The notes: generated from the sequence alone by a model not told the origin. A DNA stretch of 64,000 nt from Macrostomum lignano (GCA_002269645.1 NIVC01001740.1:124001-188000); one strand, 5' to 3'; counted from the stretch's first letter, positions 1 through 38,500 are shown. Numbers and translations: made by a program.

Positions 1-35
1 TGTAAATCGACAAACTTTACATTTCTAAAAGAAAA

Positions 36-59
36 ACAGACAGGCAGACACAAAGAGGC

Positions 60-110
<51 letters not shown>

Positions 111-424
111 AAGATAGACAGACAGACACTAAGACAGACAGACACAGAGAGGCAGGCAGACAGACAGACAGACGGACAGACAGACAGACAGACAGACGGA
201 CAGACAGACAGACAGTCAGACAGACAGTCAGACAGACAGACAAGACAGACAGACAGGCAGACAGAAAGACAGACGGACGGACAGACAGACAGACAGTCAG
301 ACAGACAGACAGACAGGCAGACACAGAGAGGCAGACAGACAGGCAGACAGACAAACAGGCAGGCAGGCAGACAGACAGACAGGCAGACAGACAAACAGGC
401 AGGCAGGCAGACAGACAGACAGGC

Positions 425-467
<43 letters not shown>

Positions 468-468
468 A

Positions 469-505
<37 letters not shown>

Positions 506-528
506 GTCAGACAGACAGACAGACAGAA

Positions 529-573
<45 letters not shown>

Positions 574-596
574 GTCAGACAGACAGACAGACAGAA

Positions 597-629
<33 letters not shown>

Positions 630-683
630 CAGAGAGGCAGACAGACAGACAGACAGACAGACACAGAGAGGCAGACAGACAGG

Positions 684-714
<31 letters not shown>

Positions 715-936
715 GCAGACAGACAGGCAGACAGACACTAAGACAGACAGACACAGAGAGGCAGGCAGACAGACAGACAGACGGACAGACAGACAGACAG
801 ACGGACAGACAGACAGACAGTCAGACAGACAGACAGACAGACAGACAGGCAGACACAGAGAGGCAGACAGACAGGCAGACAGACAAACAGGCAGGCAGGC
901 AGACAGACAGACAGGCAGACAGACAAACAGGCAGGC

Positions 937-1016
<80 letters not shown>

Positions 1017-1040
1017 GGACGGACAGACAGACAGACAAAC
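36..1040. repeat. (ACAG)n microsatellite with GCAG/ACGG variants
   Basis: About 1 kb of near-continuous acagacag; explains the SVCL-type ORFs at 17-1085. Confidence 0.97.
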
Positions 1041-1561
1041 ACTGACATTGCTTTTGATGCAGAATGTACTAAAACAGAAAACCAAACAAATTAGTTAGGA
1101 TTTAATAGACGACAATCTGAAGCGCAATCAAGTCATAAATCCTAATAACATAATAGAAAGGAATATATTGTAGTTTAGCAGTCTAACACTCAATCAGCAG
1201 GCGATGGCTTTGACAAAAGAAAAATCTTAGAAGGTACAGTGTATAAAAAGCAAAAATCGGATTAAACAGATTCCAGTCGCAAGGACGGCGCGAGCCGGGG
1301 ACACGGGTGAACTGCTGGTAATTGAACATTAGCTGATTGTTAGCAGGATTAGTCAAAATACCTGTTCAAATTGCACTAAATAGTAAAGCAGGAATTACTG
1401 CAAGAGTAGCGAGTGCACACTGGGTATGTATTGTTTAGGCAAGTTAAATATACTGCTTCAGATAAGTCAGTTAAACTTCCTAAAAGTGCATTACATCTAA
1501 AGCATAAAAACGTGAAATAAATCAGTGGGAGGCGGAGGTTCCAATGGGTGAGCGAGAGGGG

Positions 1562-4245
1562 GTCAAATGGAGTGGCGAGGGGATAGAATGGAGTAGAGAG
1601 GGGATAGAATGGAGTAGAGAGGGGATAGAATGGAGTAGAGAGGGGATAGAATGGAGTAGAGAGGAGATAGATTGGAGTAGAGAGGGGATAGATTGGAGTA
1701 GAGAGGGGATAGAATGGAGTAGAGAGGGGATAGAATGGAGTGGAGAGGGGATAGAATGAAGAGGAGAATGGATAGAATGAAGAGGAGAGGGGACAGAATG
1801 GAGTGGAGAGGGGATAGAATGGAGTGGAGAGGGGATAGAATGGAGTGGAGAGGGGATAGAATGAAGAGGAGAATGGATAGAATGAAGAGGAGAGGGGACA
1901 GAATGGAGTGGAGAGGGGATAGAATGGAGTGGAGAGGGGATAGAATGGAGTGGAGAGGGGATAGAATGGAGTGGAGAGGGGATAGAATGGAGAGGAGAAG
2001 ATATAGAATGGAGAGGAGAAGGGATAGAATGGAGTGGAAGTGGAGAGGGGATAGAATGGAGTGGAGAGGGGATAGAATGGAGTGGAGAGGGGATAGAATG
2101 GAGTGGAGAGGGGATAAATGGAGTGGAGAAGGGATAGAATGGAGTGGAGAGGGGATAGAATGGAGTGGAGAGGTGATAGAATGAAGTGGAGAGGAGGATA
2201 GAATGGAGTGGAGAGGGGATAGAATGGAGAGGAGAGGGGATAGAATGGAGTAGAGAGGGGATAAAATGGAGTGGAGGGGATAGAATGGAGTGGAGAGGGG
2301 ATAGAATGGAGTGGAGAGGGGATAGAATGGAGTGGAGAGGGGATAGAATGGAGTGGAGAGGGGATAGAATGGAGTGGAGAGAGGATAGAATGGAGAGGAG
2401 AGGGGATAGAATGGAGTGGAGAGGGGATAGAATGGAGTGGAGAGAGGATAGAATGGAGAGGAGAGGGGATAGAATGGAGAGGAGAGGGGATAGAATGGAG
2501 TGGAGAGGGGATAGAATGGAGTGGAGAGGGGATAGAATGGAGTGGAGAGGGGATAGAATGGAGTGGAGAGGAGATAGAATGGAGTGGAGAGGGGATAGAA
2601 TGGAGTGGAGAGGAGATAGAATGGAGTGGAGAGGGGATAGAATGGAGTGGAGAGGGGATAGAATGGAGTGGAGAGGGGATAGAATGGAGTGGAGAGGGGA
2701 TAGAATGGAGTAGAGAGGGTATAGAATGGAGTGGAGGGGATAGAATGGAGTGGAGAGGGGATAGAATGGAGTGAAGAGGGGACAGAATGGAGTGGAGAGG
2801 AGGATAGAATGGAGTAGAGAGGGTATAGAATGGAGTAGAGAGGGGATAGAATGGAGTGGAGGGGATAGAATGGAGTGGAGAGGTGATAGAATGAAGTGGA
2901 GAGGGGATAGAATGGAGAGGAGAGGGGATAGAATGGAGTGGAGAGGGGATAGAATGGAGTGGAGAGAGGATAGAATGGAGAGGAGAGGGGATAGAATGGA
3001 GAGGAGAGGGGATAGAATGGAGTGGAGAGGGGATAGAATGGAGTGGAGAGGGGATAGAATGGAGTGGAGAGGGGATAGAATGGAGTGGAGAGGAGATAGA
3101 ATGGAGTGGAGAGGGGATAGAATGGAGTGGAGGGGATAGAATGGAGTGGAGAGGGGATAGAATGGAGTGGAGAGGAGATAGAATGGAGTGGAGAGGGGAT
3201 AGAATGGAGTGGAGAGGGGATAGAATGGAGTGGAGAGGGGATAGAATGGAGTGAAGAGGGGATAGAATGGAGTAGAGAGGGTATAGAATGGAGTGGAGGG
3301 GATAGAATGGAGTGGAGAGGGGATAGAATGGAGTGAAGAGGGGACAGAATGGAGTGGAGAGGAGGATAGAATGGAGTAGAGAGGGTATAGAATGGAGTAG
3401 AGAGGGGATAGAATGGAGTGGAGGGGATAGAATGGAGTGGAGAGGGGATAGAATGGAGTGGAGAGGGATAGAATGGAGGAGAGGGGACAGAATGGAGAGG
3501 AGAAGGGATAGAATGGAGTGGAAGTGGAAAGGGGATAGAATGGAGTGGAGAGGGGATAGAATGGAGTGGAGAGGAGGATAGAATGGAGTGGAGAGGAGGA
3601 TAGAATGGAGTGGAGAGGGGATAGAATGGAGTGGAGAGGGGATAGAATGGAGTGGAGAGGGGATAGAATGGAGTGGAGAGGGGATAGAATGGAGTAGAGA
3701 GGGTATAGAATGGAGTGGAGGGGATAGAATGGAGTGGAGAGGGGATAGAATGGAGTGGAGAGGGTATAGAATGGAGTGGAGAGGAGGATAGAATGGAGTA
3801 GAGAGGGTATAGAATGGAGTAGAGAGGGGATAGAATGGAGTGGAGGGGATAGAATGGAGTGGAGAGGGGATAGAATGGAGTGGAGAGGGGATAGAATGGA
3901 GGAGAGGGGACAGAATGGAGAGGAGAAGGGATAGAATGGAGTGGAAGTGGAGAGGGGATAGAATGGAGAGGAGAAGGGATAGAATGGAGTGGAGAGGGGA
4001 TAGAATGAAGTGGAGAGGGGATAGAACGGAGTGGAAGTGGAGAGGGGATAGAATGGAGTGGAGAGGGGATAGAATGAAGTGGAGAGGGGGTAGAATGGAG
4101 TGGAGAGGGGATAGAATGGAGTGGAGGGGATAGAATGGAGTGGGAGTGGAGAGGGGATAGAATGGAGTGGAGAGGGGATAGAATGGAGTGGAGAGGGGAT
4201 AGAATGAAGAGGAGAGGGGATAGAATGAAGTGGAGAGGGGATAAA
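1562..4245. repeat. 21-bp purine-rich minisatellite (ggggatagaatggagtggaga)n
   Basis: About 2.7 kb tandem array; the 7-aa period (WRGDRME) of the ORFs corresponds to 21 nt; it starts about 80 bp beyond the ITPK1 stop. Confidence 0.96.
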
Positions 4246-4321
4246 TCAGGGAATAAAAAGATTTCCTATTCAAATCGACTCAGTCCGACAGTCCTTCACC
4301 CGACGGGGCCCAATGTCCTGA

Positions 4322-7300
4322 CTAATAATTAACCTTCAGCTTGATCAACTCAACCAGAGCGTCAACATAGTTGGGCATGGACTCGAATCCGGGAAACTGG
4401 TTAATGTCTACCAGGCCTAATCTACCAGATCGGGTGTCGGGCACCAGGTCCAAATTGAGCAGGTCGAGGCCGAGCACAGAGCGGCAGGCACGGCACAGCG
4501 GCTCCAGCAGGCCGGAGTAGCGGGACAGCAGCATCTCGCCGTCATCGCCGTTTTGAGCGGAGGCAGCGGCGTCGGACAGCTCGGACTGGCAGCCGGCCTT
4601 GGAGACGGCGTGGCTGGAGAACTGGATGGCCGGGCCGGCGTGGTCGGCCTGGAAATCGCGAACTGACGGACGAATGCAGGCGTGAATTCGGCTGCCAAGG
4701 ACGTACACCTGCGGTTGAAGGGGGCGGTGATGGCGCGGATTATCTGCCAGTGAAGGGGCGGATTATCTGGCAGTGAAGGGGCGGATTATCTGGCAGTGAA
4801 GGGGCGGATTATCTGGCAGTGAAGGGGCGGATTATCTGGCAGTGAAGGGGCGGATTATCTGCCAGTGAAGGGGCGGATTATCTGGCAGTGAAGGGGCGGA
4901 TTATCTGGCAGTGAAGGGGCGGATTATCGGATAGTGAAGGGGCGGATTATCGGATAGTGAAGGGGCGGATTATCGGATAGTGAAGGGGCGGATTATCGGA
5001 TAGTGAAGGGACGGATTATCTGGCAGTGAAGGGGCAGATTATCTGGTAGTGAAGGGGCGGATTATCTGGTAGTGAAGGGGCAGATTATCTGGTAGTGAAG
5101 GGGCGGATTATCTGGTAGTGAAGGTGTGGATTATCTGGCAGTGAAGGGGCAGATTATCTGGTAGTGAAGGGGCAGATTATCTGGTAGTGAAGGGGCAGAT
5201 TATCTGGTAGTGAAGGGGCAGATTATCTGGTAGTGAAGGGGCAGATTATCTGGTAGTGAAGGGGCGGATTATCTGGTAGTGAAAGGGGAGATTATCGGAT
5301 AGTGAAGGGGCAGATTATCTGGCAGTGAAGGGGCGGATTATCTGGCAGTGAAGGGACGGATTATCTGGCAGTGAAGGGGCGGATTATCTGGTAGTGAATG
5401 AGCGGATTATCGGATAGTGAAGGGGCGGATTATCGGATAGTGAAGGGGCGGATTATCGGATAGTGAAGGGGCGGATTATCGGATAGTGAAGGGGCGGATT
5501 ATCGGATAGTGAAGGGGCGGATTATCGGATAGTGAAGGGGCAGATTATCTGGCAGTGAAGGGGCGGATTATCTGGCAGTGAAGGGACGGATTATCTGGCA
5601 GTGAAGGGGCGGATTATCTGGTAGTGAATGAGCGGATTATCGGATAGTGAAGGGGCGGATTATCGGATAGTGAAGGGGCGGATTATCGGATAGTGAAGGG
5701 GCGGATTATCGGATAGTGAAGGGGCGGATTATCGGATAGTGAAGGGGCGGATTATCGGATAGTGAAGGGGCAGATTATCTGGTAGTGAAGGTGTGGATCA
5801 TCTGGTAGTGAAGGGGCGGATTATCTGGTAGTGAAGGGGCAGATTATCTGGTAGTGAAGGGGCAGATTATCTGGTAGTGAAGGGGCAGATTATCTGGTAG
5901 TGAAGGTGAAGATTATCTGGTAGTGAAGGTGTGGATTATCTGGTAGTGAAGGTGTGGATTATCTGGTAGTGAAGGGGCAGATTATCTGGTAGTGAAGGGG
6001 CAGATTATCTGGTAGTGAAGGGGCAGATTATCTGGTAGTGAAGGTGTGGATTATCTGGCAGTGAAGGGGCAGATTATCTGGTAGTGAAGGGGCAGATTAT
6101 CTGGTAGTGAAGGGGCAGATTATCTGGTAGTGAAGGGGCAGATTATCTGGTAGTGAAGGGGCAGATTATCTGGTAGTGAAGGGGCGGATTATCTGGTAGT
6201 GAATGAGCGGATTATCGGATAGTGAATGAGCGGATTATCGGATAGTGAAGGGGCGGATTATCGGATAGTGAAGGGGCGGATTATCGGATAGTGAAGGGGC
6301 GGATTATCGGATAGTGAAGGGGCAGATTATCTGGTAGTGAAGGTGTGGATCATCTGGTAGTGAAGGGGCGGATTATCTGGTAGTGAAGGGGCGGATTATT
6401 TGGCAGTAAAGGGGCGGATTATCTGGTAGTGAAGATGAAGATTATCTGGTAGTGAAGGTGTGGATTATCTGGTAGTGAAGGTGTGGATTATCTGGCAGTG
6501 AAGGGGCAGATTATCTGGTAGTGAAGGGGCAGATTATCTGGTAGTGAAGGGGCAGATTATCTGGTAGTGAAGGGGCAGATTATCTGGTAGTGAAGGGGCA
6601 GATTATCTGGTAGTGAAGGGGCGGATTATCTGGTAGTGAAGGGGCAGATTATCTGGTAGTGAAGGGGCAGATTATCTGGTAGTGAAGGGGCAGATTATCT
6701 GGTAGTGAAGGTGTGGATTATCTGGCAGTGAAGGGGCAGATTATCTGGTAGTGAAGGGGCAGATTATCTGGTAGTGAAGGGGCAGATTATCTGGTAGTGA
6801 AGGGGCAGATTATCTGGTAGTGAAGGTGTGGATTATCTGGTAGTGAAGGGGTGGATTATCTGGTAGTGAAGGGGTGGATTATCTGGTAGTGAAGGGGTGG
6901 ATTATTTGGTAGTGAAGGGGCGGATTATCTGGTAGTGAAGATGAGGATTATCTGGTAGTAAAGAATCAGGAAATGAGTCTGGATTATCGGACCGAAATAA
7001 AGGAAATTATCAATGCTTACCTTGATAATCCTAGCACCATGATTGACAAACTCCTGAGCCACCAAGGGCGGCCGCAGGTCGGCCAGCTGTCCGGCATTGA
7101 ACACCAGCGACATACTGTGCGCCTCCGCTCCGGAGGCCAGATGCGGCTTGCACAGCAGCGGGAAGCGGAGCGCGCCGTTGGAGTCGGCGACGGGGTCGCC
7201 AGGGTTCTGGACGAGGGCGTAGCGGGGCACGAACACCCGCTGGCGCAGCGGCTCGGGGCATGCGGCGACGCATCTGTAAATTTCACGGCGTGGAAGGATT

Positions 7301-8125
7301 TGTGTACGTGCGTGGGCGGGCAGGTGTACCGGTACAAGTGCCTGTGTGTGTCTGTGTACATGTACCTGGGCGGGCAGGTGTACCGGTACAAAGGCCTGGG
7401 TGGGTGTGTGTACATGTGCGTGGGCGGGCAGGTGTACATGTGCGTGGGCAGGTGTGTGTAGATGTTCGTGGGCGGGTATGTGTACATGTGCGTGGGCGGG
7501 TGTGTACATTTGCGCGTACGTATGCTTGGGCGGATATGCGTAAAATGTACATCACATATGCGTGGCAGTTTACTGTTACATTTGCATGGGCAAAGATGTA
7601 CATATGACTGGGAGGATATCCGAATGTACATCTGCTTGGGCGGGAATGCATTTAAGTACGTGGACAGATGTGTATGCATGTGATTTTGCTACTGAACATA
7701 TTCTAACCAAATGCGGATAAATAAATCGAACACAATAGGCAAATTTATTTTGCCCCAGCACACCTGGACATGGCCTGGCACTGGGCAAAGCGGTACAGCA
7801 GCATGGACTCGAGGCCGCGCAGAGGGTCCAACAGAACCAACTCGGAGCCTCTTGCCTCTATCCAAGCTTTAAACCGCCGGACACGATCGATCGATTCGGG
7901 TTTATTCGAGGTCAATTCCGAGTGAATCTTGTGCAGCACAACTCTATAGCGACTGCCCGACTGCAGCAGTTCGTCTAAATCTAGTCGGTGGAATCGAACC
8001 CCAGACGGCGGATTCTGACGGCACCGTTCGAAGAGGCGCAGCTTGCGCTCCTTCTCGTCGGACAGAAGGACGGCCACCTCAATTGGAGGCCGGTCCGCTG
8101 CGGCGGACGAAGCAACTTCGGCAGA
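4322..8125 (-). CDS. ITPK1: Inositol-tetrakisphosphate 1-kinase (ATP-grasp); exons 8125-7764, 7273-7021, 4708-4322
   Basis: Family motifs: [57 protein letters not shown]|[35 protein letters not shown] junctions are phase-compatible (2 and 0); 1002 nt = 334 codons including the stop. No ATG in exon 1 before residue ~90. Confidence 0.93.
4738..6960. repeat. 23-bp minisatellite (gtgaaggggcggattatctggca)n filling ITPK1 intron 2
   Basis: Roughly 95 tandem units with ctggta/ctggca/cggata variants. Confidence 0.96.
7295..7680. repeat. Degenerate gtgtacatgtgcgtgggcggg repeat in ITPK1 intron 1
   Basis: Repeated gtgtacatgtgcgtgggcggg-like units between the donor at 7763 and the acceptor at 7274. Confidence 0.8.
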
Positions 8126-9282
8126 CTGAAAGAGCGAATAAGTGACGTTTTAATTGCATAACCAATCAGTCGCCTATTTTGCTACTTATTCAGAAAGTAG
8201 TAGAGTACGAATAGAGCCACTATTGCTATAAAAAGACTGGTGCTGGAGTAATGCTGAGCTCTGGGCACTAACTATAACTTATACTATAGTACGTGTACCG
8301 TACATGCACGCTATCCTCTCTTCTCCCTTCGCTCTGACTGACCAAGCTTCCATGCACGTAGTTAATTGACATCACGTGACTCTGTTTCGGAATTGAGTCA
8401 TGTCATTATTAAATAGGCTACTTACTTCCCAATTACTCCGCACCCAGCCCAACTCTGCGTTGCGTGGCGCAACTTGTGTCACTGAAAAGTCAAAACTGAG
8501 CTGGAATTTACTGCGCACTCTCAAAGCCAAAGGTGGCGACTTTTTAATGTTGTTGAGTATATATCCTTTTCTAGTAAGAATTAAAATCATAAGAATATAA
8601 CAGACACAGATAATTGGTGAAAGGACAGTTGACCTTTCACCTCAAACTTGCCCCATTTCTATGAATTTCGCGTTTGAAGATGCATTTGCGCTACTCAAAC
8701 ACACGGATGTGGAGACCGAAAAGCAAAAAAATTGAAACCGAAATATAGCATTTCTTTATTCTTTTAACGATCTTTCGGAAACGGACTTCCTCAATTGACT
8801 GTTCAGTTGTGTGGGTAGTAGCTGGATAATTTTAAAAATAAATGCCTTAAAACAGCTCTTTCTCCGTTCTCTGTTAATGTTCGAAGAAACCTTCCAGTTT
8901 CTCAACAGCACTCTTCTGCAAGTGGCATCTCTTTGCTTCATTGTGCTTGAAGCGTTATGCTTGACAAGTTATATGCTTTCTCTGTTTCCCCACGCGTTGA
9001 GATAAAAATTGTCGATGATAGAAGGCAAATGTTGATGGGCTAAAGCTAATGTGTCCAATATCAGTATGGGCCATATACAATGTTCTGATCTGAACGTTGA
9101 TTTTGTACCATAAACGATTATAAACGTGATTTCTCAAAAAGGTCTCAAATGCATGGTGATGGCCTTAGGAGTCTAGGACTAAACTCGTAGTGGGGAACTG
9201 GGAAGCGAAGTTGATTTACAATCACCGAAGCGAACTTAAGTACATAGCTTAGCTTATTAGACAAGCTGAAACAAGACCAGCG

Positions 9283-10044
9283 ATGAGTCAGCGGCAAGTT
9301 GCCAGTTCCGGCGATATGTCGCAGAAAATATCAAACGCTAGCGTCACTCCAGCAACTGTTAGCATCTATTACTGCGACAGAAATCGTGTGGGCCGTCAAC
9401 CTCTTGGCACTGGCAGGTTGCTAACGGTACAGATTGACACTGATGTCGAGTCCAATGAGCATTTATTAGCTCTCGTACAGCCTGACCAGACAGTGCGGTC
9501 TCGTTTATTAGCCTGGCCGGAGAGCGTCAAACGGAATTGCATTTTGTTAGGCTTTTATACGGCTAATACTAATAAGGCGGCAAGTTCAAAGGTGGCGGCG
9601 ACTTCAAAGACGTCGGAGACAATAAAAGAGTCGGCGGCAACTTCAAGCACGCCGGAGTTAATGAAATGGTTCGAAACTTCAAATATTACGGAGACAATAA
9701 AAGATTCCGGTACTTCAAAGACGCCGGAGACAATAAAAGAGTTGGCGGCAACTTCAAAGACGTCGGAGACAATAAAACAGCCCGCGGCAACTTCAAAGAC
9801 GCCAGAGACAGTAAAACAGCCGGCGGCAACTTCAAAGACGCCAGAGACAATAAAACAGCCGGCGGCAACTTCAAAGACGCCAGAGACAATAAAAGAGTCG
9901 TCAAATTCAGTTGCTGGAATGCTGGGTCGCATAGGCTACGGATACCTATTAAATTGTTGCAACAGGGACTGCAGTTTGCTCAAATTTACAGTGGTCAAAT
10001 CTTCGTCAGCAAGCATGTCAAAAAATAGGCTGAAGTCGTCTTGA
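9283..10044 (+). CDS. Hypothetical 253-aa protein with 13-aa (39-bp) repeats TSKTPETIKQPAA
   Basis: ATG-initiated ORF with a non-repetitive N-terminal ~95 aa followed by about 7 in-frame repeats; no family recognised. Confidence 0.4.
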   Translation: MSQRQVASSGDMSQKISNASVTPATVSIYYCDRNRVGRQPLGTGRLLTVQIDTDVESNEHLLALVQPDQTVRSRLLAWPESVKRNCILLGFYTANTNKAASSKVAATSKTSETIKESAATSSTPELMKWFETSNITETIKDSGTSKTPETIKELAATSKTSETIKQPAATSKTPETVKQPAATSKTPETIKQPAATSKTPETIKESSNSVAGMLGRIGYGYLLNCCNRDCSLLKFTVVKSSSASMSKNRLKSS

Positions 10045-10522
10045 ACACCCACTATCTTACTAGACAACTAGCATAATACCTTTTATTTTTTTAGGATAAA
10101 ACACTTACCTACAGCATAATTATTAGGGAAAAAGTAATTACAACAGGAAAAATTAAAGTAACACCCAATCGTTCATTTTTTGTATTTATTTTTATGTTGT
10201 TCATTCTTGAGCGCCGTACATTAAAAGCTAACAGATTGCGCCTTGTATTAAACTAATAACACCGGAAAAGCGATGACGCAATATACAGATACTGAATACA
10301 CGATGCCGCACTCCTCAATTATTGCCCACTAATTAATATCGACGTGGTAATGCATCAGCTGCTGTGCTGACTGGCGGTAGCACATCATTTTGTCGCTATT
10401 CTTGATAACGACAAAACACAACGTGTAAGCGAATTTATATAACTGGAACACGTGCTATATATTGTGTGCTGTGCACCAGTTGCTACACGCCAACTGCGAA
10501 CACAAAATCTTTTGCCAAATGT

Positions 10523-10580
10523 ACTGTCTGTTTGTTTGATTGTCTGTCTGTCTGTCTGTCTTTGTGTCTGTCTGTCTTTG

Positions 10581-10631
<51 letters not shown>
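10523..10631. repeat. (TGTC)n microsatellite just past the COX15 stop
   Basis: Direct reading of tgtctgtc runs. Confidence 0.9.
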
Positions 10632-10632
<1 letters not shown>

Positions 10633-10657
10633 AGTTCAGCAGCTACAGCCTAACAGT

Positions 10658-11610
10658 TCACTTGGGCACGCGCCTCAGCTCGTGCATGAGCCAAGTCGTG
10701 GTGCCCAGCAGAGCCAGACTGCCAGTCTGGTGACAGGCGGCCAAAGCGATGGGCACGTAGGTGAGCAGAGTGGCGATGCCCAGCCCGGCCTGGGTGCACA
10801 CTACTGCCAGTAGGCTGTTCAGCGCCAGCCTAGTTCGAGGCGGCAGAGCGGCTCTGCGAGTTTTGGCCGCCACAGCCCACAGCCAAACGGCGGCAACCGC
10901 ACAGGCGGTGCTGTGCCCCAGCAGTCGGTGATTGAACTGAGTAGCGCTGGCATTCTCAAACAGATTCCTCCAAGCCGGCTGCAGAGCCCAATAGTCGGTT
11001 GGCACCCAGCGGTCGGCCATCTTCGGCCAGCTGTTGTACACCAAGCCGGCGTCGATACCGGCAACGAACGCGCCGGAAATGGCCGTGGCGAAGGCGGCCG
11101 ACGTCAGCAGGTGGGCAGCGGCGGCCAGGCGGCCGCGCAGAGCCACGGCGGCGCCGAATTGAGTGAACGGCAGCAGGTGGGTGAGGGCCGACCAGGTGAA
11201 CAGGGAGAATAGCAGCAGGGCCGAGCCCAGGTGAGCGGCCAGTCTGTACTGGCTGACCCGGGGCACGTCCTGAGTCAGGGTGTCCTTGCTCAGCCCGCTG
11301 CGGACCATGTACCAGCCTAGCAGTCCTTGGCCAAGGATTAGACTGCCGTAGATTAGCACTCGCTTGCGCATGGCGGGCTGAGGTGGGGGCGGGGGTGGTA
11401 GGGACGGCATGTGGCACTGCGGTTTGACATGTTGTTGCTTAGGGATCAGTGGTAGAATTGACAAAACTACTTGACTCAATGCTGGCTGCGATTTGAGTGT
11501 CGAAATATTATCCAATTCACTAACTGACTAACCCACTAACTGACTAACTGACTGACTAAATAACCAACTAACTGACTGACTTACTAGCTGACTAACTGAC
11601 TAACTAACTG

Positions 11611-11641
<31 letters not shown>

Positions 11642-11682
11642 CACTGACTAACTAACTAACTGACTAACTAATTAACTAATTG

Positions 11683-11717
<35 letters not shown>

Positions 11718-11718
11718 G

Positions 11719-11753
<35 letters not shown>

Positions 11754-11777
11754 GACTAAGTAAGTAACTAACTAACC

Positions 11778-11821
<44 letters not shown>

Positions 11822-11918
11822 GACTGACTAACTAACTAACTAACTAACTGACTAAGTAAGTAACTAACTAACCAACTAACTAACTAACTAACTAACTGAC
11901 TAACTAATTAACTAATTG

Positions 11919-11953
<35 letters not shown>

Positions 11954-11954
11954 G

Positions 11955-11993
<39 letters not shown>

Positions 11994-12034
11994 CACTGAC
12001 TAACTAACTAACTGACTAACTAATTAACTAATTG

Positions 12035-12073
<39 letters not shown>

Positions 12074-12125
12074 GACTAACTAACTAACTAACTAACTAAC
12101 TGACTAAGTAAGTAACTAACTAACC

Positions 12126-12161
<36 letters not shown>

Positions 12162-12410
12162 GACTGACTAACTAACTAACTAACTAACTGACTAAGTAAG
12201 TAACTAACTAACCAACTAACTAACTAACTAACTAACTGACTAACTAATTAACTAATTGACTAACTAACTAACTAACTAACTAACTAATTGACTAACTAAC
12301 TAACTGACTAACTAACTGACTAACTAACTAACTGACTAACTAACTAACTAACTGACTAAATAACCAACTAACTGACTGACTTACTAGCTGACTAACTGAC
12401 TAACTAACTG

Positions 12411-12453
<43 letters not shown>

Positions 12454-12674
12454 CACTGACTAACTAACTAACTGACTAACTAACTAATTGACTAACTAAC
12501 TAACTAACTAACTAACTGACTGACTAAGTAAGTAACTAACTGACTAACTAACTGACTAAATAACTAACTGACTGACTAAGTAAGTAACTAACTAACCAAC
12601 TAACTAACTAACTAACTAATTGACTAACTAACTAACTGACTAACTAACTAACTCACTGACTAACTAACTAACTG

Positions 12675-12731
<57 letters not shown>

Positions 12732-14060
12732 TTGACTAACTAACTAACTGACTAACTAAATAACTGACTAAGTAAGTAAATAACTAACTAACTGAATAAA
12801 TAACTAACTAATTAACTATCCATCTAATTAACGAACTAATTACTGATTAATTAACTACGAGCGTAACTATCTATCTAAGTACCTACTAAGTGATTTAACT
12901 AACTAACGAACTAACTAACCTAATTTGGGCTGTACAGTTACATCCAATGGTCAGATCACGTGACCCGAGCCCCTATCTTGGCTGGCACAGCCCACCTGAA
13001 AGCGGCCCCGAGCCCAGAAGTAAGCGGCCGGCAGGAGGAAGGCAGCTCCGATCGCCCGACCCCAGGTTCTGTGCAGAAACTCCAGCCAGAAGATGGCTTT
13101 GAAATCGTTCAGCGACATGCTGCCTCGCTCGCGCACGATGTACTCGTACTCCGGGTAGGCCTGGTAGCGCTGGAACTCCCGCTCCCAGTCTGACTGAGTC
13201 ACTGGCGGCAGCTCCTGGATTCCATTGATTATGGATTGGACGCGTGAGAGAGAATATGAGCATGATAAGATTAGAGCCAATAGTAATGATGACTTTTGAG
13301 CTAAAGATGAGATTGGACACACTGTGAGATTAGAAACGCGTTGAATTTGAGGACAAAAGGGACAATTAGCGACAACGATGAGTTTTAGAGCTAAGGGTAA
13401 GATTAGAGTCAGAGTGAGGTAAGAGAAAGGTTAGATTAGATTATTGTTGAGATTAGACTAGGGGTGGGGGAGATAAACCAGAGTGAGATTCAAGTCAGTG
13501 TGAAACTAAAGCTGGGTTAAGATTAGAGTAAATGTGAGATTCGAGTCTAGATTGAGACTAGATTCATGTAAGATAAAGTCATGGTGAGACAACAGTAAGG
13601 ATGAGATAAGCCTGGGTGAGATTAGAGTCTGGGTGAGATCAGAGACTGAGTGAGATTAGAGACACACACAGAAACCCTTAAACACCTTAAACAGCGACCA
13701 GTTGGTCATGCTCAGGCCGGACCTCGTGAGCCGGGTCAGGCCGCCCAGCACAACGGCTCCAGCGGTCATCCCGGCGCAGGTGGCCAGCCAGATGCCGACG
13801 GCGCGTCTCTGGCCAGCGGTGAGATGCGCCACCATCGGGTGCCAGACCGGTGAAGCCGACGGAGGCGCCGACGAGTGGCACCGGCGGATGGCGTTGCCGC
13901 CTAGCGGAGATCGACTCTGATTACGCAATCGATTGCGCAACAGCGAGCCAAACTGGGATTGGCGAGCGTTGGCGGCCAGCAGGCTGCCGGAGTTCAACGA
14001 GCAGCAGCGAACCGTGCTCAGCCCGAGATGGGCCGGCGCTGACAGGTGGCGAATGGCGAA
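10658..14060 (-). CDS. COX15: Heme A synthase COX15; exons 14060-13686, 13214-12996, 11377-10658
   Basis: Motifs [92 protein letters not shown]. All junctions are phase 0 GT-AG; 1314 nt = 438 codons including the stop. Confidence 0.96.
11521..12920. repeat. (CTAA)n microsatellite with CTGA variants in COX15 intron 2
   Basis: About 1.4 kb of taactaac. Confidence 0.96.
13330..13660. repeat. Degenerate gagattagagt repeat in COX15 intron 1
   Basis: Recurrent gattagagt/gtgagatt units; highly diverged. Confidence 0.6.
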
Positions 14061-14171
14061 CTGAGTTGAGGAGAGGGTTAATAAATACAGGCTGTGAAAA
14101 TTAGCGTTCCGTTCCGAACTGGAGGGCACAATTACGATCCCTAAGGTTGAAGAATTTCTCGCCTTAAGTTC

Positions 14172-17144: not shown

Positions 17145-17842
17145 CAAGGACGACTTAAGTAGAAGGACGGGAAACCTCGTTTCTTAGAAAAGTTTTGAAG
17201 GCACTTTTTCCCGAAAAAATACACTACGGAGATAGGAAGTTTTCATTTTTTCAGCACAAAAATTGTTATTGCGTTTGATAGGAGGCAGATCCAGTGTTCA
17301 TCTTTTGATATGTTGTGCCTTTTTTATTGCTCTATCGATATTTATAAAGCTTTTCGTTCAGAAAATTAGGATTCTATGTTAATTTTTTATTCTACGTATA
17401 TTTCCTGGATCTAAAAATCACAAAAATGCATGACACAGCTCCAATATTTGGTTTTATGAACCTATTTTATCATCTCTGTTACAAATATTTGCTACACAGT
17501 CGGGTAAGAATGATAAAAAAGACTCATGAAGCTAAAGAGCCGAGCCGTGGCATTCTAATGTATTTCAAGCACAAGACACGCGAAAATATACGTAGAATAA
17601 AAAATTAACATAGAATCCTAATTTTCTGAACGAAAAGCTTTATAAATATCGATAGAGCAATAAAAAAGGCACAACATATCAAAAGATGAACACTGGATCT
17701 GCCTCCTATCAAACGCAATAACAATTTTTGTGCTGAAAAAATGAAAACTTCCTATCTCCGTAGTGTATTTTTTCGGGAAAAAGTGCCTTCAAAACTTTTC
17801 TAAGAAACGAGGTTTCCCGTCCTTCTACTTAAGTCGTCCTTG
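17145..17842. mobile_element. 698-bp non-autonomous DNA transposon (foldback/MITE) with 259-bp TIRs and an 8-bp TSD
   Basis: 17145-17403 is the reverse complement of 17584-17842; termini CAAGG...CCTTG; ATTTTTCT is duplicated at 17137-17144 and 17843-17850. Confidence 0.92.
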
Positions 17843-24630: not shown

Positions 24631-27600
24631 AAACATTACAGCCACAAGGTCTAAGACACAACGAGAAATACAGAAAAGCAAGGCAAAGCCAGAAATGAAG
24701 GACAAGCAGACAACACTAAACACCTAAACACTAAGGCAGACAGTGACAGAGTCAAGACAGAAACAAAGAGGGAGACAGAGATTGATAGTCAGACAAGCTA
24801 CCAAAAAAACAACACATAACTAGTTGGATGCATAGCTAGCAAAAGCAACTTACCTTCGCACTTGGCCAATAAATTCATTACTATCGCCAGCTACTGGTTG
24901 ATTTGAATCCTGACGAAACAGCTGGCGAAACAGTTTGCGTAGAGGCATGAGCCAGCTAGCATGAGAACAATTGCAATGGTAGCATTACTAATTAGACTTA
25001 AGTTTTGTCTTAAGTTTTTAAACAGATCTGATTACTACATGTTTAACATCAATAGATAATTTGGAAAGTTTTAGTATAGGTTAGTTCATCTCTTAAGGCA
25101 TATCTAGATTTTGTTATAATTTAGGATATTTTAAGGCATATCTAGATTTTGTTATAATTTAGGATATTATTAAGGCATATCTAGATTTTGTTATAATTTA
25201 GGATATTATTAAGGCATATCTAGATTTTGTTATAATTTAGGATATTATTGTAGTGCCAAAAAGCACAATTCTTATTTTTTAATCGAAATCTTCAGACAGT
25301 TAAAGAACCATGGTACAATTCCTTTGACAATACAAAATGCATTAACCTAAAACCTTAATGATGCATACAGTCATAGACCACAAAGTCAAAGATAATACAT
25401 AGATGGCTAACACTTCTTGATTAAAGTTAGGAAGGTGGCAAAGGATGCATTGGAATAAATTGATAAGGTAGAATCTATGTGCTAGGGGGCCTATCTATGT
25501 AATATATATATGCTATTTCTAATAGTAAATCAATATAAAAATGTTTAATTTAACATTTGAAAATGGAAGTTAGATTAACAAATAACAATTTGTTTTTCAC
25601 AACAAGATTAATACCAAGTCTTAGAATTCATGCTGATTTATGCTAGAAAATCTGGTTTCCATGTACACTAGGGACTTTACAAAGCATATGGATATAGATA
25701 TGGTTATAAAAACATATATTTCCAATACTTTGTTCTAATATTACAGTATTACCAAGACTTAAAAAACCATTTGAGCTGTTGATTTAATAGGGATAAGGGT
25801 AAATAAATTTTGCTAGTTTCAAAGTGAGGGGAACTCATAAGTCCCTAGAATTTAGGACTTAAATAATAGCAATTTTTGTTATACTTAGGTGGTTAAGGTT
25901 AAATATAAGATGAATAGGGGCCTACTTCACTTTTAAAAGGAAGCTCTAAGTCCCTAGCATCTGGGACTAGTATGGGGTTGGGATGATATTGATAAGGGGC
26001 TAATTCTCAAATGCTTTGAGATTGCAATCAAGCAAATTACAGGATTCTTGCTGTCTGGGGGATACTTGCTATCTAGTTCTAGGGTTGCTTACTATTAGGA
26101 TATCTAGGGCTGTGTGCTATAGGGAGATGCTTGCTATAGGCCTAGGGGTTTCTAATTCATTTGTCTACCAACAATTTGTCTGCTAAGTAGATAAAATGCC
26201 CTTTCCTTCTTAAAACTGTTCATCTACTAGGAAATGGGATATGGATAAAGAGTAAAGTAGGGACTAGTAGGGAGCTGCCTAACAACCTCTCTGTCCATTA
26301 ACATTGATATACTTATAATGTTATAAAGCGCTGCATTTATAGGGGTCTTTGATTATCATTTTAACAAACTATTTCACAATACACACCTAAAATAAGAAAG
26401 CTTAACTAAAAATAATGGAATGGAAACTGTTAAAAATTTGATGAAGATAAAAATATTGGCAAATAATTATTCTCATTAAAAAAATTATTAGATGCAAGAC
26501 ATCTGTGCCATTTGTAGAAAGTGTGTGAGCACTCGACAACAAGCTTTGCAATGTGATGATTGCAGTCAATGGCAGCACCAAATATGTGGTTCAGGCATAA
26601 GCCAAAAGGAGTAGGCCAATGAAGAGGTTAATGAAGAGGTTGTGGCCCTTGTGGGTTGGGCAGCTCCCCACCCCCATTTCCCGGCAGATGAACAGTTTTT
26701 GAAAGAGAAAACTTTTTGTCTGCTTAGCAGACGAACTGTCAGCAGACGAAACGACTGGTATCCGCTAGGTTTATAGGCCCTAAATTGAATGCTTGCTTGC
26801 TGTCTGGGGGATGCTTGCTATCTAGGGGATGATTGCTATCTGGCGAGATGCTTGACATCTGGGGAATGCTTTCGACTTAGGGGAATGCCTATTATCTTTG
26901 TGAAGGCTTTATTTTGTGGTGTTTTTTTGTTTATTTTAGAAAAAAGAGATTCATAGCAAACATCTTTGTCCATGACAAATTTACTCAAATAAGGTGAATC
27001 TATAAAACAGAAGAAATCTTTTCTTAAGAAAATGTGCTTTTTTCAATGGAATTCCATGAAAACTTTTGCTCCTTGCTTATTGGGCGCTCCGAAAGGGGGC
27101 ACTAGATTGCTAGTCTATATTATAACTAAACCTAAAAAGTTAATTTCCAAACTAAACTGTCAATAATCGTTCGAAGAAATCTATATTTTAACCACGTGGG
27201 AAGCAAGGAAATGCTTTGAAATCTAGCCGTATCAATGAATAAAAGCAAAGGCAGCCAAAACTTATTAATTTAAAAACATAAGTAGCGCAGCTGGTTAAGT
27301 TGTTTTTTGGCTAGTAAATTTTGTTTAAAAACAGTACTTCTTATAAAACAAAATTCAATTCAATTCAAGGTCTGTTTCTTGATTTTTTCTATTTAATTGC
27401 CATTAAGTTGTATAGACGTTAAAAGCAAGGACCACTAGAAGAAGAAGGGGCCTTTTCATATTGCTTGTTCTGGTTCCAGAACCAGAACCAATTTGTGAAG
27501 TATAACTTTTTGTCTCCATAACTAGAGGGAGATACGTGCTATAAAGTTTCTATTATTGTATGAAAAACGCCAAGAAGAAAGTGAAAAATTGTGCTAAGTG

Positions 27601-35519: not shown

Positions 35520-38500
35520 ATGTTGGCATCATTGCTGCTCCTTCCTCTAAGCCGTCGCTGTTGTAACAGCTTTAGGCTTCAAAAATGCAGCATCCGCTGC
35601 CGCCATTCTGCATCAGCAGATTATCAAAATGGCAGCCGGCAGCGTCTTGTAATTCTGGGCACGGGCTGGGGCAGCTACTCGGCTCTGCGCAATGTTGACA
35701 AATCAAAATTTGATGTCATTGTCGTGTCGCCTAGGAATCACTTTCTATTCACCCCGCTGCTGTGCTCAACAACTGTTGGTACGCTTGAGTTTCGTTCCAT
35801 TATTGAGCCGGTGCGCGAGTATGGCTTCAGACAGTCGGACCATTTCCATCTGGCCGAGGCCACTGAGGTGGACTTTAATCTGCGTGAGGTCACCTGCCGT
35901 TCCTGTTTGGGAAGTCGAGCATCCTATCAGATTGGCTATGATCGATTGATTATTGGGGTGGGTGCGCTCACTAATACCTTTGGCGTGCCCGGTGTTAATG
36001 AGCACGCCTTCTTTCTCAAGGTGAGATTTGAGTAAGGCCCTAATAAAATATTTAAAGTCTGGATTTATCCCCGTGTAATTTATCCTTAAAGGTGTCTGTT
36101 AATCCCTTGATTTCGGATTCTTAATAATGTCTTCTATTCTCTTAATTTGGTATTATTAAAGGTTTCTGCTAATTCCTTAATTTGAAGTTTTTAGGGTGTC
36201 CGGCAATCCCTAGTTTAGGATTCTTGAAAATGTCCAGTAATTCCTAGTTTGGGATTGTTAAAGGTGTCCAGTCATTCCTAGTTTGGGATTGTTAAAGGTG
36301 TCCAGTAATTCCTAGTTTGGGATTGTTAAAGGTGTCCGGTAGTCCCTAGTTTGAGATTCTTAAAGATGTCCGGTAGTCCCTAGTCTGGGATCCTTAAAGA
36401 TGTCCGGCAATCCCTAGTTTGGGATTGTTAAAGATGTCCGGTAGTCCCTAGTTTTGGATTCTTAAAGATGTCCGGTAGTCCCTAGTTTGGGATTGTTAAA
36501 GATGTCCGGTAGTCCCTACTTTTGGATTCTTAAAGATGTCCGGTAGTCCCTAGATTTGGATTCTTAAAGATGTCCGGTAGTCCCTAGTTTGGGGTTCTTA
36601 AAGATGTCCGGTAGTCCCTAGTTTGGGGTTCTTAAAGATGTCCGGTAGTCCCTAGTTTTGGATTCTTAAAGATGTCCGGTAGTCCCTAGTTTGGGATTCT
36701 TAAAGATGTCCGGTAGTCCCTAGTCTGGGATCCTTAAAGATGTCCGGCAATCCCTAGTTTGGGATTGTTAAAGATGTCCGGTAGTCCCTAGTTTTGGATT
36801 CTTAAAGATATCCAGTAGTCCCTAGTTTGGGATTGTTAAAGATGTCCGGTAGTCCTTACTTTTGGATTCTTAAAGATGTCCGGTAGTCCCTAGTTTTGGA
36901 TTCTTAAAGATATCCGGTAGTCCCTAGTTTGGGATTGTTAAAGACGTCCGGTAGTCCCTAGTTTGGGATTCTTAAAGATATCCGGTAGTCCCTAGTTTGG
37001 GATTGTTAAAGATGTCCGGCAATTCCTAGTTTGGGATTGTAGGATTCTATTGCTAACTATAAATCGCATAGATTGCCCATAGCTAATATGAAATATGAAA
37101 AAACCTCTGGCAGGAGGTGAGCGACGCCAGGCAAATCCGTGAGCGCCTGATTGAGAACACTGAGCTGGCCCAGCAGGCCTGGATCAGTCCAGACGAGCGG
37201 GCACGCCTGCTGCACACTGTCATTGTGGGCGGCGGACCGACCGGTGTGGAATTCGGCGCTGAATTGTACGACTTTGCTCGGACAGATTTGGCCAGGCTGT
37301 ACCGGCACAAAGCCGCCGATGTGCGCGTCACCCTGGTCGAATCGGCCCAGATTCTTGCCTCGTTCGACGCCTCGTTGCGTAATTATGCGGAGAAAAAGAT
37401 TCGAGCTAGAAAAAATTTCGACTTGCGACAGGGAACTGTTGCGTCGGTTGACGCCCAGGGAGCGGCGCTCAGGTTTGTGTAGCTCCGCAGACTGAATTTT
37501 TACAGTCACGTGACCATTTGTCTTAGATCATAAAAGTCACGGGACCATTCGTCTTAGATCATAAAAGTCACGTGACCATTCGTCTTAGACCTTAAAATTT
37601 ACGTGATCATTTGTCTTAAACCATCTAAAGTCACGTGACCATTCGTCTTAGATCATAAAAGTCACGGGACCATTCGTCTTAGATCATAAAAGTCACGTGA
37701 CCATTCGTCTTAATCCATAAAAGTCACGTGACCATTCGTCTTAAACCTTAAAAGTCACGTGACCATTCGTCTTGGATCATAAAAGTCACGTGACCATTCG
37801 TCTTAATTCATATAAGTCACGTGACCATTCGTCTTAGACCTTAAAAGTCACGTGACCATTCGTCTTAGAACTTGAAAGACACATAGTCAGACTTTAGATA
37901 TCGCCAGATTTTTAGGGAGTTGACCAGCTTGTTTGAGGTGACGTAATTTTATTGTCACGTGACCTTTTTTTCTTAAAAGTCACAAGATTTCTATAGCGTG
38001 AGCAACCTGTAAGTAAGATTTTTTCCGGACTATAGAAATCATTTGGATTTCTTACGGTAATGTAATCAGCTTTCTTAGAATGTCTTAGAAGAGTCACGTG
38101 TTTTTCACAGTTATGCGACTAGCCCTTGTTTCAAAGTCAAATGATTCTTAGTCACGTGACCATCGCTAATAATAATGACATTTTTGTATAGTCATTTGAT
38201 CAATCTCCTTCAAAGTAACGTGAGCAGAATCTTATAAAAATCACTTGATTTCCTACAGGCACGTGACCAGAGCGTTCGGGGAAGTCACGTGATTCGTAGC
38301 AATTCATACGCTAGAGGTCTATAACTACAGCCCCATAAATTACACTCGGATAACTCCCACCCGCGCAGAGACGGCAGTCGCTTGCCTGCAGGCCTGGTTG
38401 TGTGGAGCACTGGCTTGGCGCCGCGGCCTTTCATACGCGATCTAGACGCGCCTAAGAGTCCCAGCGGTCAGCTTTTAACAGATCCGCAGCTGAGAGTTCT

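What the first reader, a model, noticed from the sequence alone, without database searches (positions are those of the whole stretch)
8070..8145. ITPK1 shows the same phase-0 acceptor with no ATG
Seen: acceptor tattcgctctttcAG (8127-8126) is followed by TCT GCC GAA GTT..., exactly 16 codons upstream of and in frame with the conserved [12 protein letters not shown] start of the kinase. No ATG occurs before residue ~90, and the ORF track starts on GTG. AUG + exon gives MSAEVASS. A second case 6 kb from COX15 makes chance less likely. Inference: the SL supplies the start codon.
Basis: partly seen in the sequence, partly recalled or inferred. Interest (0 to 1): 0.72.

Follow-up and report, generated by a model that had tools for sequence, protein, structure and literature searches.

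The report
Flatworm spliced leader supplies start codon
The inositol-phosphate kinase gene (ITPK1) of the flatworm Macrostomum lignano has no start codon of its own and almost certainly borrows the AUG at the end of the trans-spliced leader, a mechanism known in flatworms since 2006, so this is an ordinary new example.

Summary
The window is Macrostomum lignano (assembly Mlig_3_7, contig NIVC01001740.1, reverse strand). On the minus strand, the acceptor tattcgctctttcAG (8127-8126) is followed in frame by 16 codons and then the conserved ITPK1 N-terminus. An in-frame TAA (8152-8150) lies just upstream. The first genomic in-frame ATG is codon 108 (7804-7802), beyond residues that are invariant in homologues.

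The published M. lignano spliced leader is 35 nt and ends in ...TTGCATG. The acceptor fits the published trans-splice motif [T/C]TNCAG. Two independent public annotations start the protein without a Met at or next to this acceptor: UniProt entries begin 'SAEVASS', and GenBank PAA64557.1 is marked 'partial'. COX15, 5.9 kb upstream on the same strand, behaves the same way (acceptor 14062-14061; MFAIRHL... looks like a mitochondrial presequence).

I could not reach SL-containing reads, ribosome profiling or protein data.

The mechanism is already established for flatworms (Cheng et al. 2006; the same logic was used for Echinococcus). This is a new member of a known kind and of low interest. One of the three genomic copies has the acceptor mutated AG>TG, a natural test case.

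The parts
8126..8140 (-). Trans-splice acceptor of ITPK1: pyrimidine-rich tract tattcgctctttc followed by AG (8127-8126). The last six bases, TTTCAG, fit the M. lignano SL acceptor motif [T/C]TNCAG.
   Evidence: motif from PMC8629364. Conserved in copy L001; mutated to TG in copy L003.
8150..8152 (-). In-frame TAA stop in the outron, 8 codons upstream of the acceptor. It excludes any contiguous upstream genomic start.
8078..8125 (-). First 16 codons of exon 1 ([16 protein letters not shown]). With the SL AUG they give the N-terminus MSAEVASS...
   Evidence: GC rises from 0.37 in the 100 nt upstream to 0.65 here. UniProt models start with exactly this S.
8075..8077 (-). GTG (Val 18 of the SL-initiated protein). 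It is the start of the mechanical ORF and the first residue of the conserved beta-strand [12 protein letters not shown].
7764..8125 (-). ITPK1 exon 1 (donor CAG|gtgtgc).
   Evidence: The spliced translation is 100% identical to PAA64557.1.
7802..7804 (-). First genomic in-frame ATG (codon 108). Starting here would delete the N-terminal domain, including invariant K26, H66, K67 and D101.
7021..7273 (-). ITPK1 exon 2 (acceptor tttacag|ATGCGTC, donor AAG|gtaagc).
4322..4708 (-). ITPK1 exon 3, including the TAG stop (4324-4322).
   Evidence: Pfam PF05770, E=4.7e-41.
8128..9282 (-). Outron / intergenic region between the ITPK1 acceptor and the divergently oriented 253-aa gene (ATG at 9283 on the + strand). 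It contains a 91-bp insertion (8426-8336) found only in this copy.
14061..14062 (-). AG acceptor of COX15 (ctcaactcAG|TTC GCC ATT), phase 0. This is the second case.
   Evidence: Conserved in all three copies.
13686..14060 (-). COX15 exon 1. With the SL AUG it reads [21 protein letters not shown]..., with no acidic residue in the first 126 aa and 11 R/K in the first 89. The only genomic Met sits just before the first conserved segment.
   Evidence: GenBank PAA64559.1 is 'partial' and starts AIRHLS; UniProt A0A1I8I9D7 starts FAIRHLS.
10658..13214 (-). COX15 exons 2 (13214-12996) and 3 (11377-10658, including the stop).
   Evidence: the spliced product is 437 aa, against 436 aa annotated.

Best explanation

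**Shown.** The ITPK1 gene (BOX15_Mlig017294g2) has three exons on the minus strand. It has no genomic start codon upstream of its conserved N-terminal domain.

**Inferred, step 1.** Its pre-mRNA is SL trans-spliced at the acceptor AG 8127-8126. The region upstream (the outron, which contains an in-frame TAA) is discarded. The 35-nt spliced leader CGGTCTCTTACTGCGAAGACTCAATTTATTGCATG is joined directly to TCT GCC GAA...

**Inferred, step 2.** Because the acceptor is in phase 0, the 3'-terminal AUG of the leader becomes codon 1. It is also the first AUG met by a scanning ribosome. The product is a 334-aa kinase beginning [29 protein letters not shown]....

**Second case.** The same reasoning applies to COX15 at AG 14062-14061. 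There the SL AUG opens a roughly 88-residue presequence-like extension (MFAIRHL...).

**Known from the literature.** The flatworm SL AUG can serve as an initiator.
For: **Identity.**
- The spliced protein is 100% identical to M. lignano PAA64557.1, and L002 is identical to the window.
- Pfam PF05770 scores E=4.7e-41. Human ITPK1 structures align from query residue 19.

**Geometry.**
- Acceptor, phase, upstream stop and absence of ATG are read directly from the sequence.

**Leader and motif.**
- The SL ends in ATG and the acceptor motif is [T/C]TNCAG (PMC8629364).

**Annotation.**
- UniProt models from the other assembly start at the first exon codon with no Met, for both ITPK1 (SAEVASS) and COX15 (FAIRHLS).
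- GenBank models are 'partial'.
- In that pipeline, 5' ends of trans-spliced genes are set from SL-read peaks after trimming the SL (PMC5730564).
- COX15 and ITPK1 carry the same transcriptional-unit prefix, Mlig017294 g1/g2.

**Need for an upstream start.**
- All homologues start 8-38 residues before the conserved strand.
- M108 would remove invariant residues.
- The COX15 extension is presequence-like.

**Composition.**
- There is a sharp GC step exactly at the acceptor.

**Precedent.**
- PMC9851317, PMC12582326, PMC3510090 and PMC10468722 all describe the flatworm or Macrostomum SL ATG as a start codon.
Against: - No SL-junction read, 5' RACE product, ribosome footprint or N-terminal peptide for this gene could be examined. 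Trans-splicing at 8126|8125 is inferred from annotation boundaries and a motif.
- The GenBank CDS starts 3 nt after the acceptor, not at it. The same +3 offset is seen behind a genuine genomic ATG in the neighbouring ankyrin gene. That annotation therefore carries an unexplained systematic shift and is imperfect evidence.
- The sequence context of the SL AUG is poor for initiation (U at -3, U at +4).
- The 16 extra codons are not conserved outside Macrostomum. The three genomic copies are too similar (about 98%) to test them for coding constraint.
- The COX15 acceptor (ACTCAG) matches only the CAG part of the motif.
- One copy (L003) lacks the AG yet keeps an intact ORF.
Confidence: 0.85

Rival explanations
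1. An undetected upstream exon, spliced in cis to the same acceptor, carries the real ATG.
For: Parasitic flatworms often share 3' acceptors between cis- and trans-splicing (PMC12582326). Scanning 8128-10657 on the minus strand finds 64 ATG...|GT phase-0 possibilities. One has a strong donor: ATG 8590 to 8426, GAA|GTAAGT, 55 aa.
Against: The GTAAGT donor of the only strong candidate lies inside a 91-bp insertion (8426-8336) that the other two genomic copies lack. Its peptide has no resemblance to anything. Two RNA-based annotations found no such exon and left the ORF 5'-open. The region also hosts a divergently oriented gene.
Confidence: 0.05
2. Translation starts at a near-cognate codon in the genome-encoded part of the mRNA (GTG 8077, or ATT 8083). 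The SL AUG is skipped or the mRNA is not trans-spliced.
For: The GTG is the first residue of the conserved strand, and the ORF finder starts there. The SL AUG has a weak context. The 16 upstream codons are not conserved in homologues. The L003 copy lacks the acceptor.
Against: On a trans-spliced mRNA the in-frame SL AUG comes first, and it is known to be used in flatworms. Every homologue has at least 8 residues before this strand. The same explanation would be needed independently for COX15, where about 88 presequence-like residues precede the only Met.
Confidence: 0.05
3. The gene starts at the first genomic ATG (codon 108), making an N-terminally truncated protein, or this copy is a pseudogene.
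For: ATG 7804-7802 is the first AUG of any frame in the genome-encoded mRNA. M. lignano is a hidden polyploid with redundant copies.
Against: The truncation would delete residues invariant across homologues (K26, H66, K67, D101) and the part that aligns to residues 12-103 of solved human ITPK1. The upstream 107 codons are open and identical or nearly so in three copies. The ORF is intact throughout.
Confidence: 0.03
4. Assembly or annotation artefact: a start codon is missing because of a sequence error near 8126.
For: The assembly is based on long reads. The GenBank CDS coordinates show a systematic +3 oddity.
Against: Three independently assembled copies, plus protein models from a second assembly, agree on the sequence around the junction. 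COX15 shows the same architecture in all three copies.
Confidence: 0.02

Closest known systems
Flatworm SL 3'-terminal AUG used as initiator methionine (Cheng, Cohen, Ndegwa & Davis, J Biol Chem 2006; Schistosoma mansoni)
   Same: The SL ends in ...UUGCAUG. The acceptor is in phase 0. The recipient mRNA has no other AUG upstream of the conserved N-terminus, so the SL AUG is required. As summarised in PMC9851317, 28% of trans-spliced S. mansoni transcripts are in frame and more than 40 cDNAs need the SL AUG.
   Different: The species is a free-living macrostomid rather than a parasitic trematode, and the genes differ (ITPK1, COX15). Nothing was tested experimentally here, whereas Cheng et al. 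showed use of the AUG in vivo.
Echinococcus granulosus SL-bearing cDNAs that need the SL AUG (PMC3510090)
   Same: [quoted passage not shown]
   Different: That study had the SL physically present on the cDNAs. Here the SL junction is inferred from the genome and from annotation.
slORFs: ORFs created by SL addition (slORFfinder, PMC9851317)
   Same: The ORF exists only after the SL is attached.
   Different: slORFfinder targets mostly near-cognate NUG codons in nematode, tunicate and kinetoplastid SLs and needs Ribo-seq. Here the codon is a true AUG at the very 3' end of the SL.
Macrostomum SL trans-splicing as annotated (PMC5730564, PMC8629364, PMC10468722)
   Same: Same SL, same acceptor motif, same assembly. 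[quoted passage not shown]
   Different: In the text I could read, none of these papers counts or names genes that depend on the SL ATG. The public protein records for these genes are simply left 'partial'.

Membership tests
SL-AUG-initiated flatworm mRNAs (Cheng et al. 2006 class) | The organism's spliced leader ends in AUG immediately before the SL donor site. | tested here: met
   Organism identified as M. lignano. Published SL is CGGTCTCTTACTGCGAAGACTCAATTTATTGCATG, followed by GTAAG (PMC8629364). No SL RNA gene lies in the window itself.
SL-AUG-initiated flatworm mRNAs (Cheng et al. 2006 class) | The mRNA is SL trans-spliced at the proposed acceptor. | tested here: inconclusive
   Indirect only. 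TTTCAG fits the motif. UniProt models start exactly at 8125 and GenBank models are 5'-partial. The pipeline defines such ends from SL reads. There is a GC step at the acceptor.
SL-AUG-initiated flatworm mRNAs (Cheng et al. 2006 class) | The acceptor is in phase 0 with the main ORF. | tested here: met
   8125 is 48 nt upstream of GTG 8077 in the same frame. COX15 14060 is likewise in frame.
SL-AUG-initiated flatworm mRNAs (Cheng et al. 2006 class) | There is no alternative in-frame AUG that would preserve the conserved N-terminus. | tested here: met
   The first in-frame ATG is codon 108, with an in-frame TAA upstream of the acceptor. Homologues and solved human ITPK1 align from residue 19.
SL-AUG-initiated flatworm mRNAs (Cheng et al. 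2006 class) | Ribosomes actually initiate at the SL AUG. | not testable with these tools
   This needs Ribo-seq, N-terminal proteomics or a reporter assay.
Inositol-tetrakisphosphate 1-kinase / inositol 1,3,4-trisphosphate 5/6-kinase (ITPK1) | ATP-grasp kinase domain PF05770, plus the N-terminal domain homologous to solved ITPK1. | tested here: met
   PF05770 E=4.7e-41, residues 132-327. Human ITPK1 2odt/2q7d E about 1e-35 over query 19-325. Pfam's separate N-terminal model PF17927 was not hit, but the N-terminal region aligns with it in homologues.
COX15 / CtaA haem A synthase | PF02628 across the protein. | tested here: met
   The three exons hit PF02628 model positions 2-36, 39-106 and 107-321.

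The most novel reading that the evidence does not exclude
In M. lignano a sizeable class of conserved housekeeping genes (here 2 of the 6 genes whose starts I could read in this window) has lost its own start codon. These genes would depend entirely on trans-splicing for translation. A point mutation in the acceptor AG, as in the third ITPK1 copy (L003, AG>TG), would then act as a start-codon loss and silence a homeologue. Such genes would also be systematically mis-annotated as 'partial' in public databases.
Probability: 0.3. Interest if true: 0.4.

Novelty: new member of a known kind. Interest (0 to 1): 0.2.

Why it matters
- **Annotation.** The public records for these genes (PAA64557.1, PAA64559.1 and their paralogues; UniProt A0A1I8I9R3 and others) are labelled partial or lack a Met. 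In fact the full protein can be written down by adding the SL-encoded Met. Pipelines that trim the SL including its ATG will under-call complete ORFs in flatworms.
- **Biology.** It illustrates that in Macrostomum, as in parasitic flatworms, some conserved genes cannot be translated correctly unless they are trans-spliced.
- **Practical use.** It matters for designing transgenes from such promoters. The published constructs had to add an artificial ATG (PMC5730564).
- **Limit.** It does not reveal a new mechanism.

Tried and rejected
- **Rfam scan.** A scan of the whole window at gathering thresholds gave 0 hits. A search for the SL 3' end plus donor with up to 3 mismatches gave 0 matches. There is no SL RNA gene in the window.
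- **Homologue search with exon 1 alone.** It found nothing, apparently because of the word prefilter. The full-length query then found the M. lignano proteins.
- **Gene identifiers in the literature.** I searched papers and supplements for Mlig017294, Mlig024962 and Mlig005377, hoping for per-gene trans-splicing calls. Nothing was found.
- **Primary papers.** Cheng 2006 and Wasik 2015 are not held in the library. I relied on how later papers summarise them.
- **NDH-2 as an anchor.** I used the last homologue search on NDH-2, hoping to reach the annotation of the far side of the window. No M. lignano entry came back, so I read those gene starts directly from ORFs instead.
- **Coding constraint on the first 16 codons.** Comparing the three genomic copies gave no power. 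Upstream divergence is only about 1.5-2%, and there are 0 differences in 48 nt.
- **ATG depletion of exon 1.** It is not significant once the protein sequence is fixed (P=0.42).
- **Upstream exon candidate 8590-8426.** Rejected: its donor lies in a copy-specific insertion.
- **Alternative phase-0 acceptor ttgAG|GTG (8079-8078).** Considered and set aside. It has no pyrimidine tract, does not fit the motif, and is not the annotated 5' end.

Full report
**1. What is in the sequence.**

The feature lies on the minus strand. Reading 8200 to 7700 in the frame of the kinase gives ...TAA(8152-8150) N V T Y S L F Q | [28 protein letters not shown]....

- The AG at 8127-8126 is preceded by the pyrimidine-rich tattcgctctttc.
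- The next base (8125) is exactly 16 codons upstream of the GTG at 8077, and in frame with it. The mechanical ORF list starts the ORF at that GTG.
- The first in-frame genomic ATG is codon 108 counted from the acceptor (7804-7802). No ATG occurs in any frame in the first 321 nt of the exon.

I built the gene model from splice sites:
- exon 1: 8125-7764 (CAG|gtgtgc)
- exon 2: 7273-7021 (tttacag|ATGCGTC ... AAG|gtaagc)
- exon 3: 4708-4322 (ccgcag|GTGTAC ... TAG)

The product has a PF05770 ATP-grasp kinase domain (E=4.7e-41). It aligns to solved human ITPK1 (2odt, 2q7d; E about 1e-35) from residue 19 onward.

**2. Where the window comes from.**

- The spliced protein is 100% identical to GenBank PAA64557.1, 'hypothetical protein BOX15_Mlig017294g2, partial [Macrostomum lignano]'.
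- The contig that encodes it (GCA_002269645.1, NIVC01001740.1; locus L002) is base-for-base identical to the reverse complement of the window.
- Two further genomic copies exist: L001 (Mlig024962g2) and L003 (Mlig024962g1). This fits the known partial genome duplication of this species.

**3. The spliced leader.**

- The published M. lignano SL is the 35-mer CGGTCTCTTACTGCGAAGACTCAATTTATTGCATG. It therefore ends in AUG.
- The top motif at SL acceptors is [T/C]TNCAG, and about 30% of genes are trans-spliced (PMC8629364).
- The ITPK1 acceptor TTTCAG fits this motif.
- No SL RNA gene lies in the window. None is expected, because the SL RNA is supplied in trans from other loci.

**4. Evidence that the mRNA starts at this acceptor.**

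I could not retrieve reads or transcripts, so the evidence is indirect. It has four independent strands.

- (a) UniProt entries from the other M. lignano assembly, A0A1I8I9R3 and A0A1I8I7L6, begin 'SAEVASS'. That is exactly the first exon codon, with no Met.
- (b) The three GenBank models are all flagged 'partial' and begin 'AEVASS'. In the Mlig_3_7 pipeline, SL-containing reads were trimmed of the SL and mapped. Their peaks were used to cut transcriptional units into genes before ORF calling (PMC5730564). An SL-AUG-dependent gene would necessarily come out of that pipeline as a 5'-open ORF.
- (c) In this contig COX15 and ITPK1 are named Mlig017294g1 and g2. They share one transcriptional-unit prefix, as expected if a longer precursor was cut at experimentally supported sites.
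- (d) GC content steps from 0.37 in the 100 nt upstream to 0.65 in the first 48 nt after the AG. This places an exon boundary at 8125 and not at the GTG.

One caveat applies to (b). The GenBank CDSs begin 3 nt after the acceptor. The same +3 shift appears in the neighbouring ankyrin-repeat gene, where the skipped codon is a genuine genomic ATG. Non-'partial' neighbours keep their ATG. This looks like a systematic coordinate quirk of that submission. I cannot explain it, so I rate that annotation as imperfect evidence.

**5. Why the SL AUG is needed.**

- All homologues recovered start with a Met 8-38 residues before the strand that aligns with [12 protein letters not shown].
- Human ITPK1 has 11 residues before that strand.
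- Starting at Met 108 would delete columns that are invariant across the alignment (K26, H66, K67, D101). It would also delete the part matching residues 12 to about 103 of the solved structure.
- The in-frame TAA at 8152 rules out a contiguous upstream start.
- On a trans-spliced mRNA, the SL AUG at nucleotides 33-35 is the first AUG and is in frame. The product is [17 protein letters not shown] followed by the conserved core, 334 aa in all.

**6. The second case.**

COX15 is on the same strand (Pfam PF02628 across three exons). I reconstructed it as 14060-13686, 13214-12996 and 11377-10658.

- Its exon 1 follows ctcaactcAG (14062-14061) in phase 0.
- GenBank PAA64559.1 is 'partial' and starts AIRHLS. 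UniProt A0A1I8I9D7 starts FAIRHLS, exactly at the acceptor.
- The only genomic Met (WHPMVAHL) sits just before the first conserved membrane segment.
- With the SL AUG the protein opens [21 protein letters not shown].... There are 11 Arg/Lys and no acidic residue in the first 89 residues, and the first Asp/Glu is at residue 127. This is the composition expected of a mitochondrial presequence, which COX15 needs. That expectation is my own knowledge of mitochondrial import.
- This case argues more strongly than ITPK1 that the codons between the acceptor and the first Met are translated.
- The acceptor is conserved in all three copies. It matches only the CAG part of the motif.

**7. Chance.**

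- Between the TAA and the GTG there are four AGs, and two are in phase 0.
- Only 8127-8126 has a pyrimidine tract. The other phase-0 AG (ttgAG|GTG, 8079-8078) is a poor site.
- Being in frame has a prior of 1/3, or 1/9 for two genes. In S. mansoni about 28% of SL junctions are in frame, which is roughly random. Phase alone is therefore weak evidence.
- What makes the case is the combination: phase 0, no alternative AUG, and a required N-terminus.
- Of the six genes in the window whose 5' ends I could read, four have their own ATG: ankyrin gene 24948-24946, 253-aa gene 9283, NDH-2 35520, and the ApoO-like gene near 40641. Two do not: COX15 and ITPK1.

**8. Rivals.**

- **Upstream cis exon.** A scan of 8128-10657 found 64 ATG...|GT phase-0 combinations. 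Only one has a GT[AG]AG donor (8590-8426, 55 aa). That donor lies inside a 91-bp insertion (8426-8336) absent from the other two copies. No annotation uses it. Rejected, about 0.05.
- **Near-cognate initiation at GTG 8077.** This cannot be excluded without ribosome profiling. It is disfavoured because the in-frame SL AUG precedes the GTG, and because COX15 would need a separate explanation. About 0.05.
- **Start at Met 108, or a pseudogene.** About 0.03.
- **Sequence error.** About 0.02. Three copies and a second assembly agree on the sequence.

**9. Comparison with what is known.**

- That all flatworm SLs end in AUG, and that this AUG can serve as initiator, was shown by Cheng et al. (J Biol Chem 2006). 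It is repeated in PMC9851317 (28% in frame; more than 40 S. mansoni cDNAs require it), PMC12582326 and PMC5832876.
- The E. granulosus EST study used exactly the present argument.
- I found no paper that lists ITPK1 or COX15, or that counts SL-AUG-dependent genes in M. lignano.

The finding is thus a new member of a well-known kind, not a new mechanism.

**10. A small extra.**

In copy L003 the acceptor reads ctctttcTGtctgcc, an AG>TG change.

- The ORF stays intact, with two amino-acid changes.
- The COX15 model of that copy is truncated at 287 aa.
- If the SL supplies the start codon, this substitution is equivalent to a start-codon loss. That makes L003 a natural test case.
- I could not tell whether that copy is expressed.

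**11. Verdict.**

- The remaining uncertainty comes entirely from the lack of direct RNA and protein evidence.
- The mechanism is already known, so interest is low (0.2).
- The practical value is mainly in correcting 'partial' protein records and in transgene design.

Noticed in passing
L003:10096-10097 (equivalent to window 8127-8126): The third genomic copy of ITPK1 (Mlig024962g1) has the trans-splice acceptor AG changed to TG. Its ORF is intact, with two amino-acid changes. The COX15 model of the same contig is truncated to 287 aa. This may be a decaying homeologue and a natural test of dependence on the SL AUG.
   Followed up: partly
window 24946-24948 (minus strand); L004:5998-6000: The ankyrin-repeat gene upstream of COX15 (Mlig007804, 'partial', protein starts PLRKLF) has a genomic ATG immediately before its annotated first codon. 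All three 'partial' GenBank CDSs in this cluster therefore start 3 nt after their true first codon, while non-partial neighbours keep their ATG. This looks like a systematic coordinate shift in the submission and is unexplained.
   Followed up: partly
L004:5981-5987 versus window about 24960: In copy L004 a good acceptor, ttctcCAG|CTAGCTGGCTCATGCCT, lies 11 nt before the ankyrin gene's ATG. If it is used, the SL AUG would be out of frame and open a uORF of roughly two dozen codons (counted by eye) that overlaps the real start. In the window copy the CAG is replaced by ATG (ttctcATGctagc), so the acceptor is absent.
   Followed up: no
window 8336-8426: A 91-bp insertion in the ITPK1 outron is present only in the window's copy. 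It carries a consensus-looking GTAAGT donor and a CACGTG palindrome.
   Followed up: partly
window 9283-10044 (+): A divergently oriented gene lies between COX15 and ITPK1. It has no Pfam hit and encodes a tandem 'ATSKTPETIKQPA'-type repeat. The copy number varies between genomic copies (253, 335 and 470 aa).
   Followed up: partly
window 1-4300, 4760-6900, 7290-7680, 58466-60349, 46580-47730 / 49800-50924: There are very large blocks of short tandem repeats, including most of ITPK1 intron 2 (a roughly 23-bp unit, whose array length accounts for the different gene sizes of 1.8, 3.8 and 4.7 kb in the three copies). One satellite family is shared between 46.6-47.7 kb, 49.8-50.9 kb and 59.4-60.3 kb at about 90-93% identity.
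   Followed up: partly
window 35520-38891 (+): A type-II (alternative) NADH dehydrogenase NDH-2 gene (Pyr_redox_2 plus NDH2_C) has its own genomic ATG and a presequence-like N-terminus (MLASLLLLPLSRRCC...). The nearest named hits are from nematodes and a mussel. No M. lignano entry was returned by the protein search.
   Followed up: partly
window 62500-64000 (+); 53601-54158 and 61991-62473; 17199-17366 (+) / 17621-17788 (-): A retroelement-like ORF (by eye protease/reverse-transcriptase-like; not checked against Pfam) runs off the right end of the window. Two near-identical copies of an unidentified ORF-bearing element lie at 53.6 and 62.0 kb. An inverted duplicate encoding the same 56-aa ORF lies at 17.2 and 17.6 kb.
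   Followed up: no
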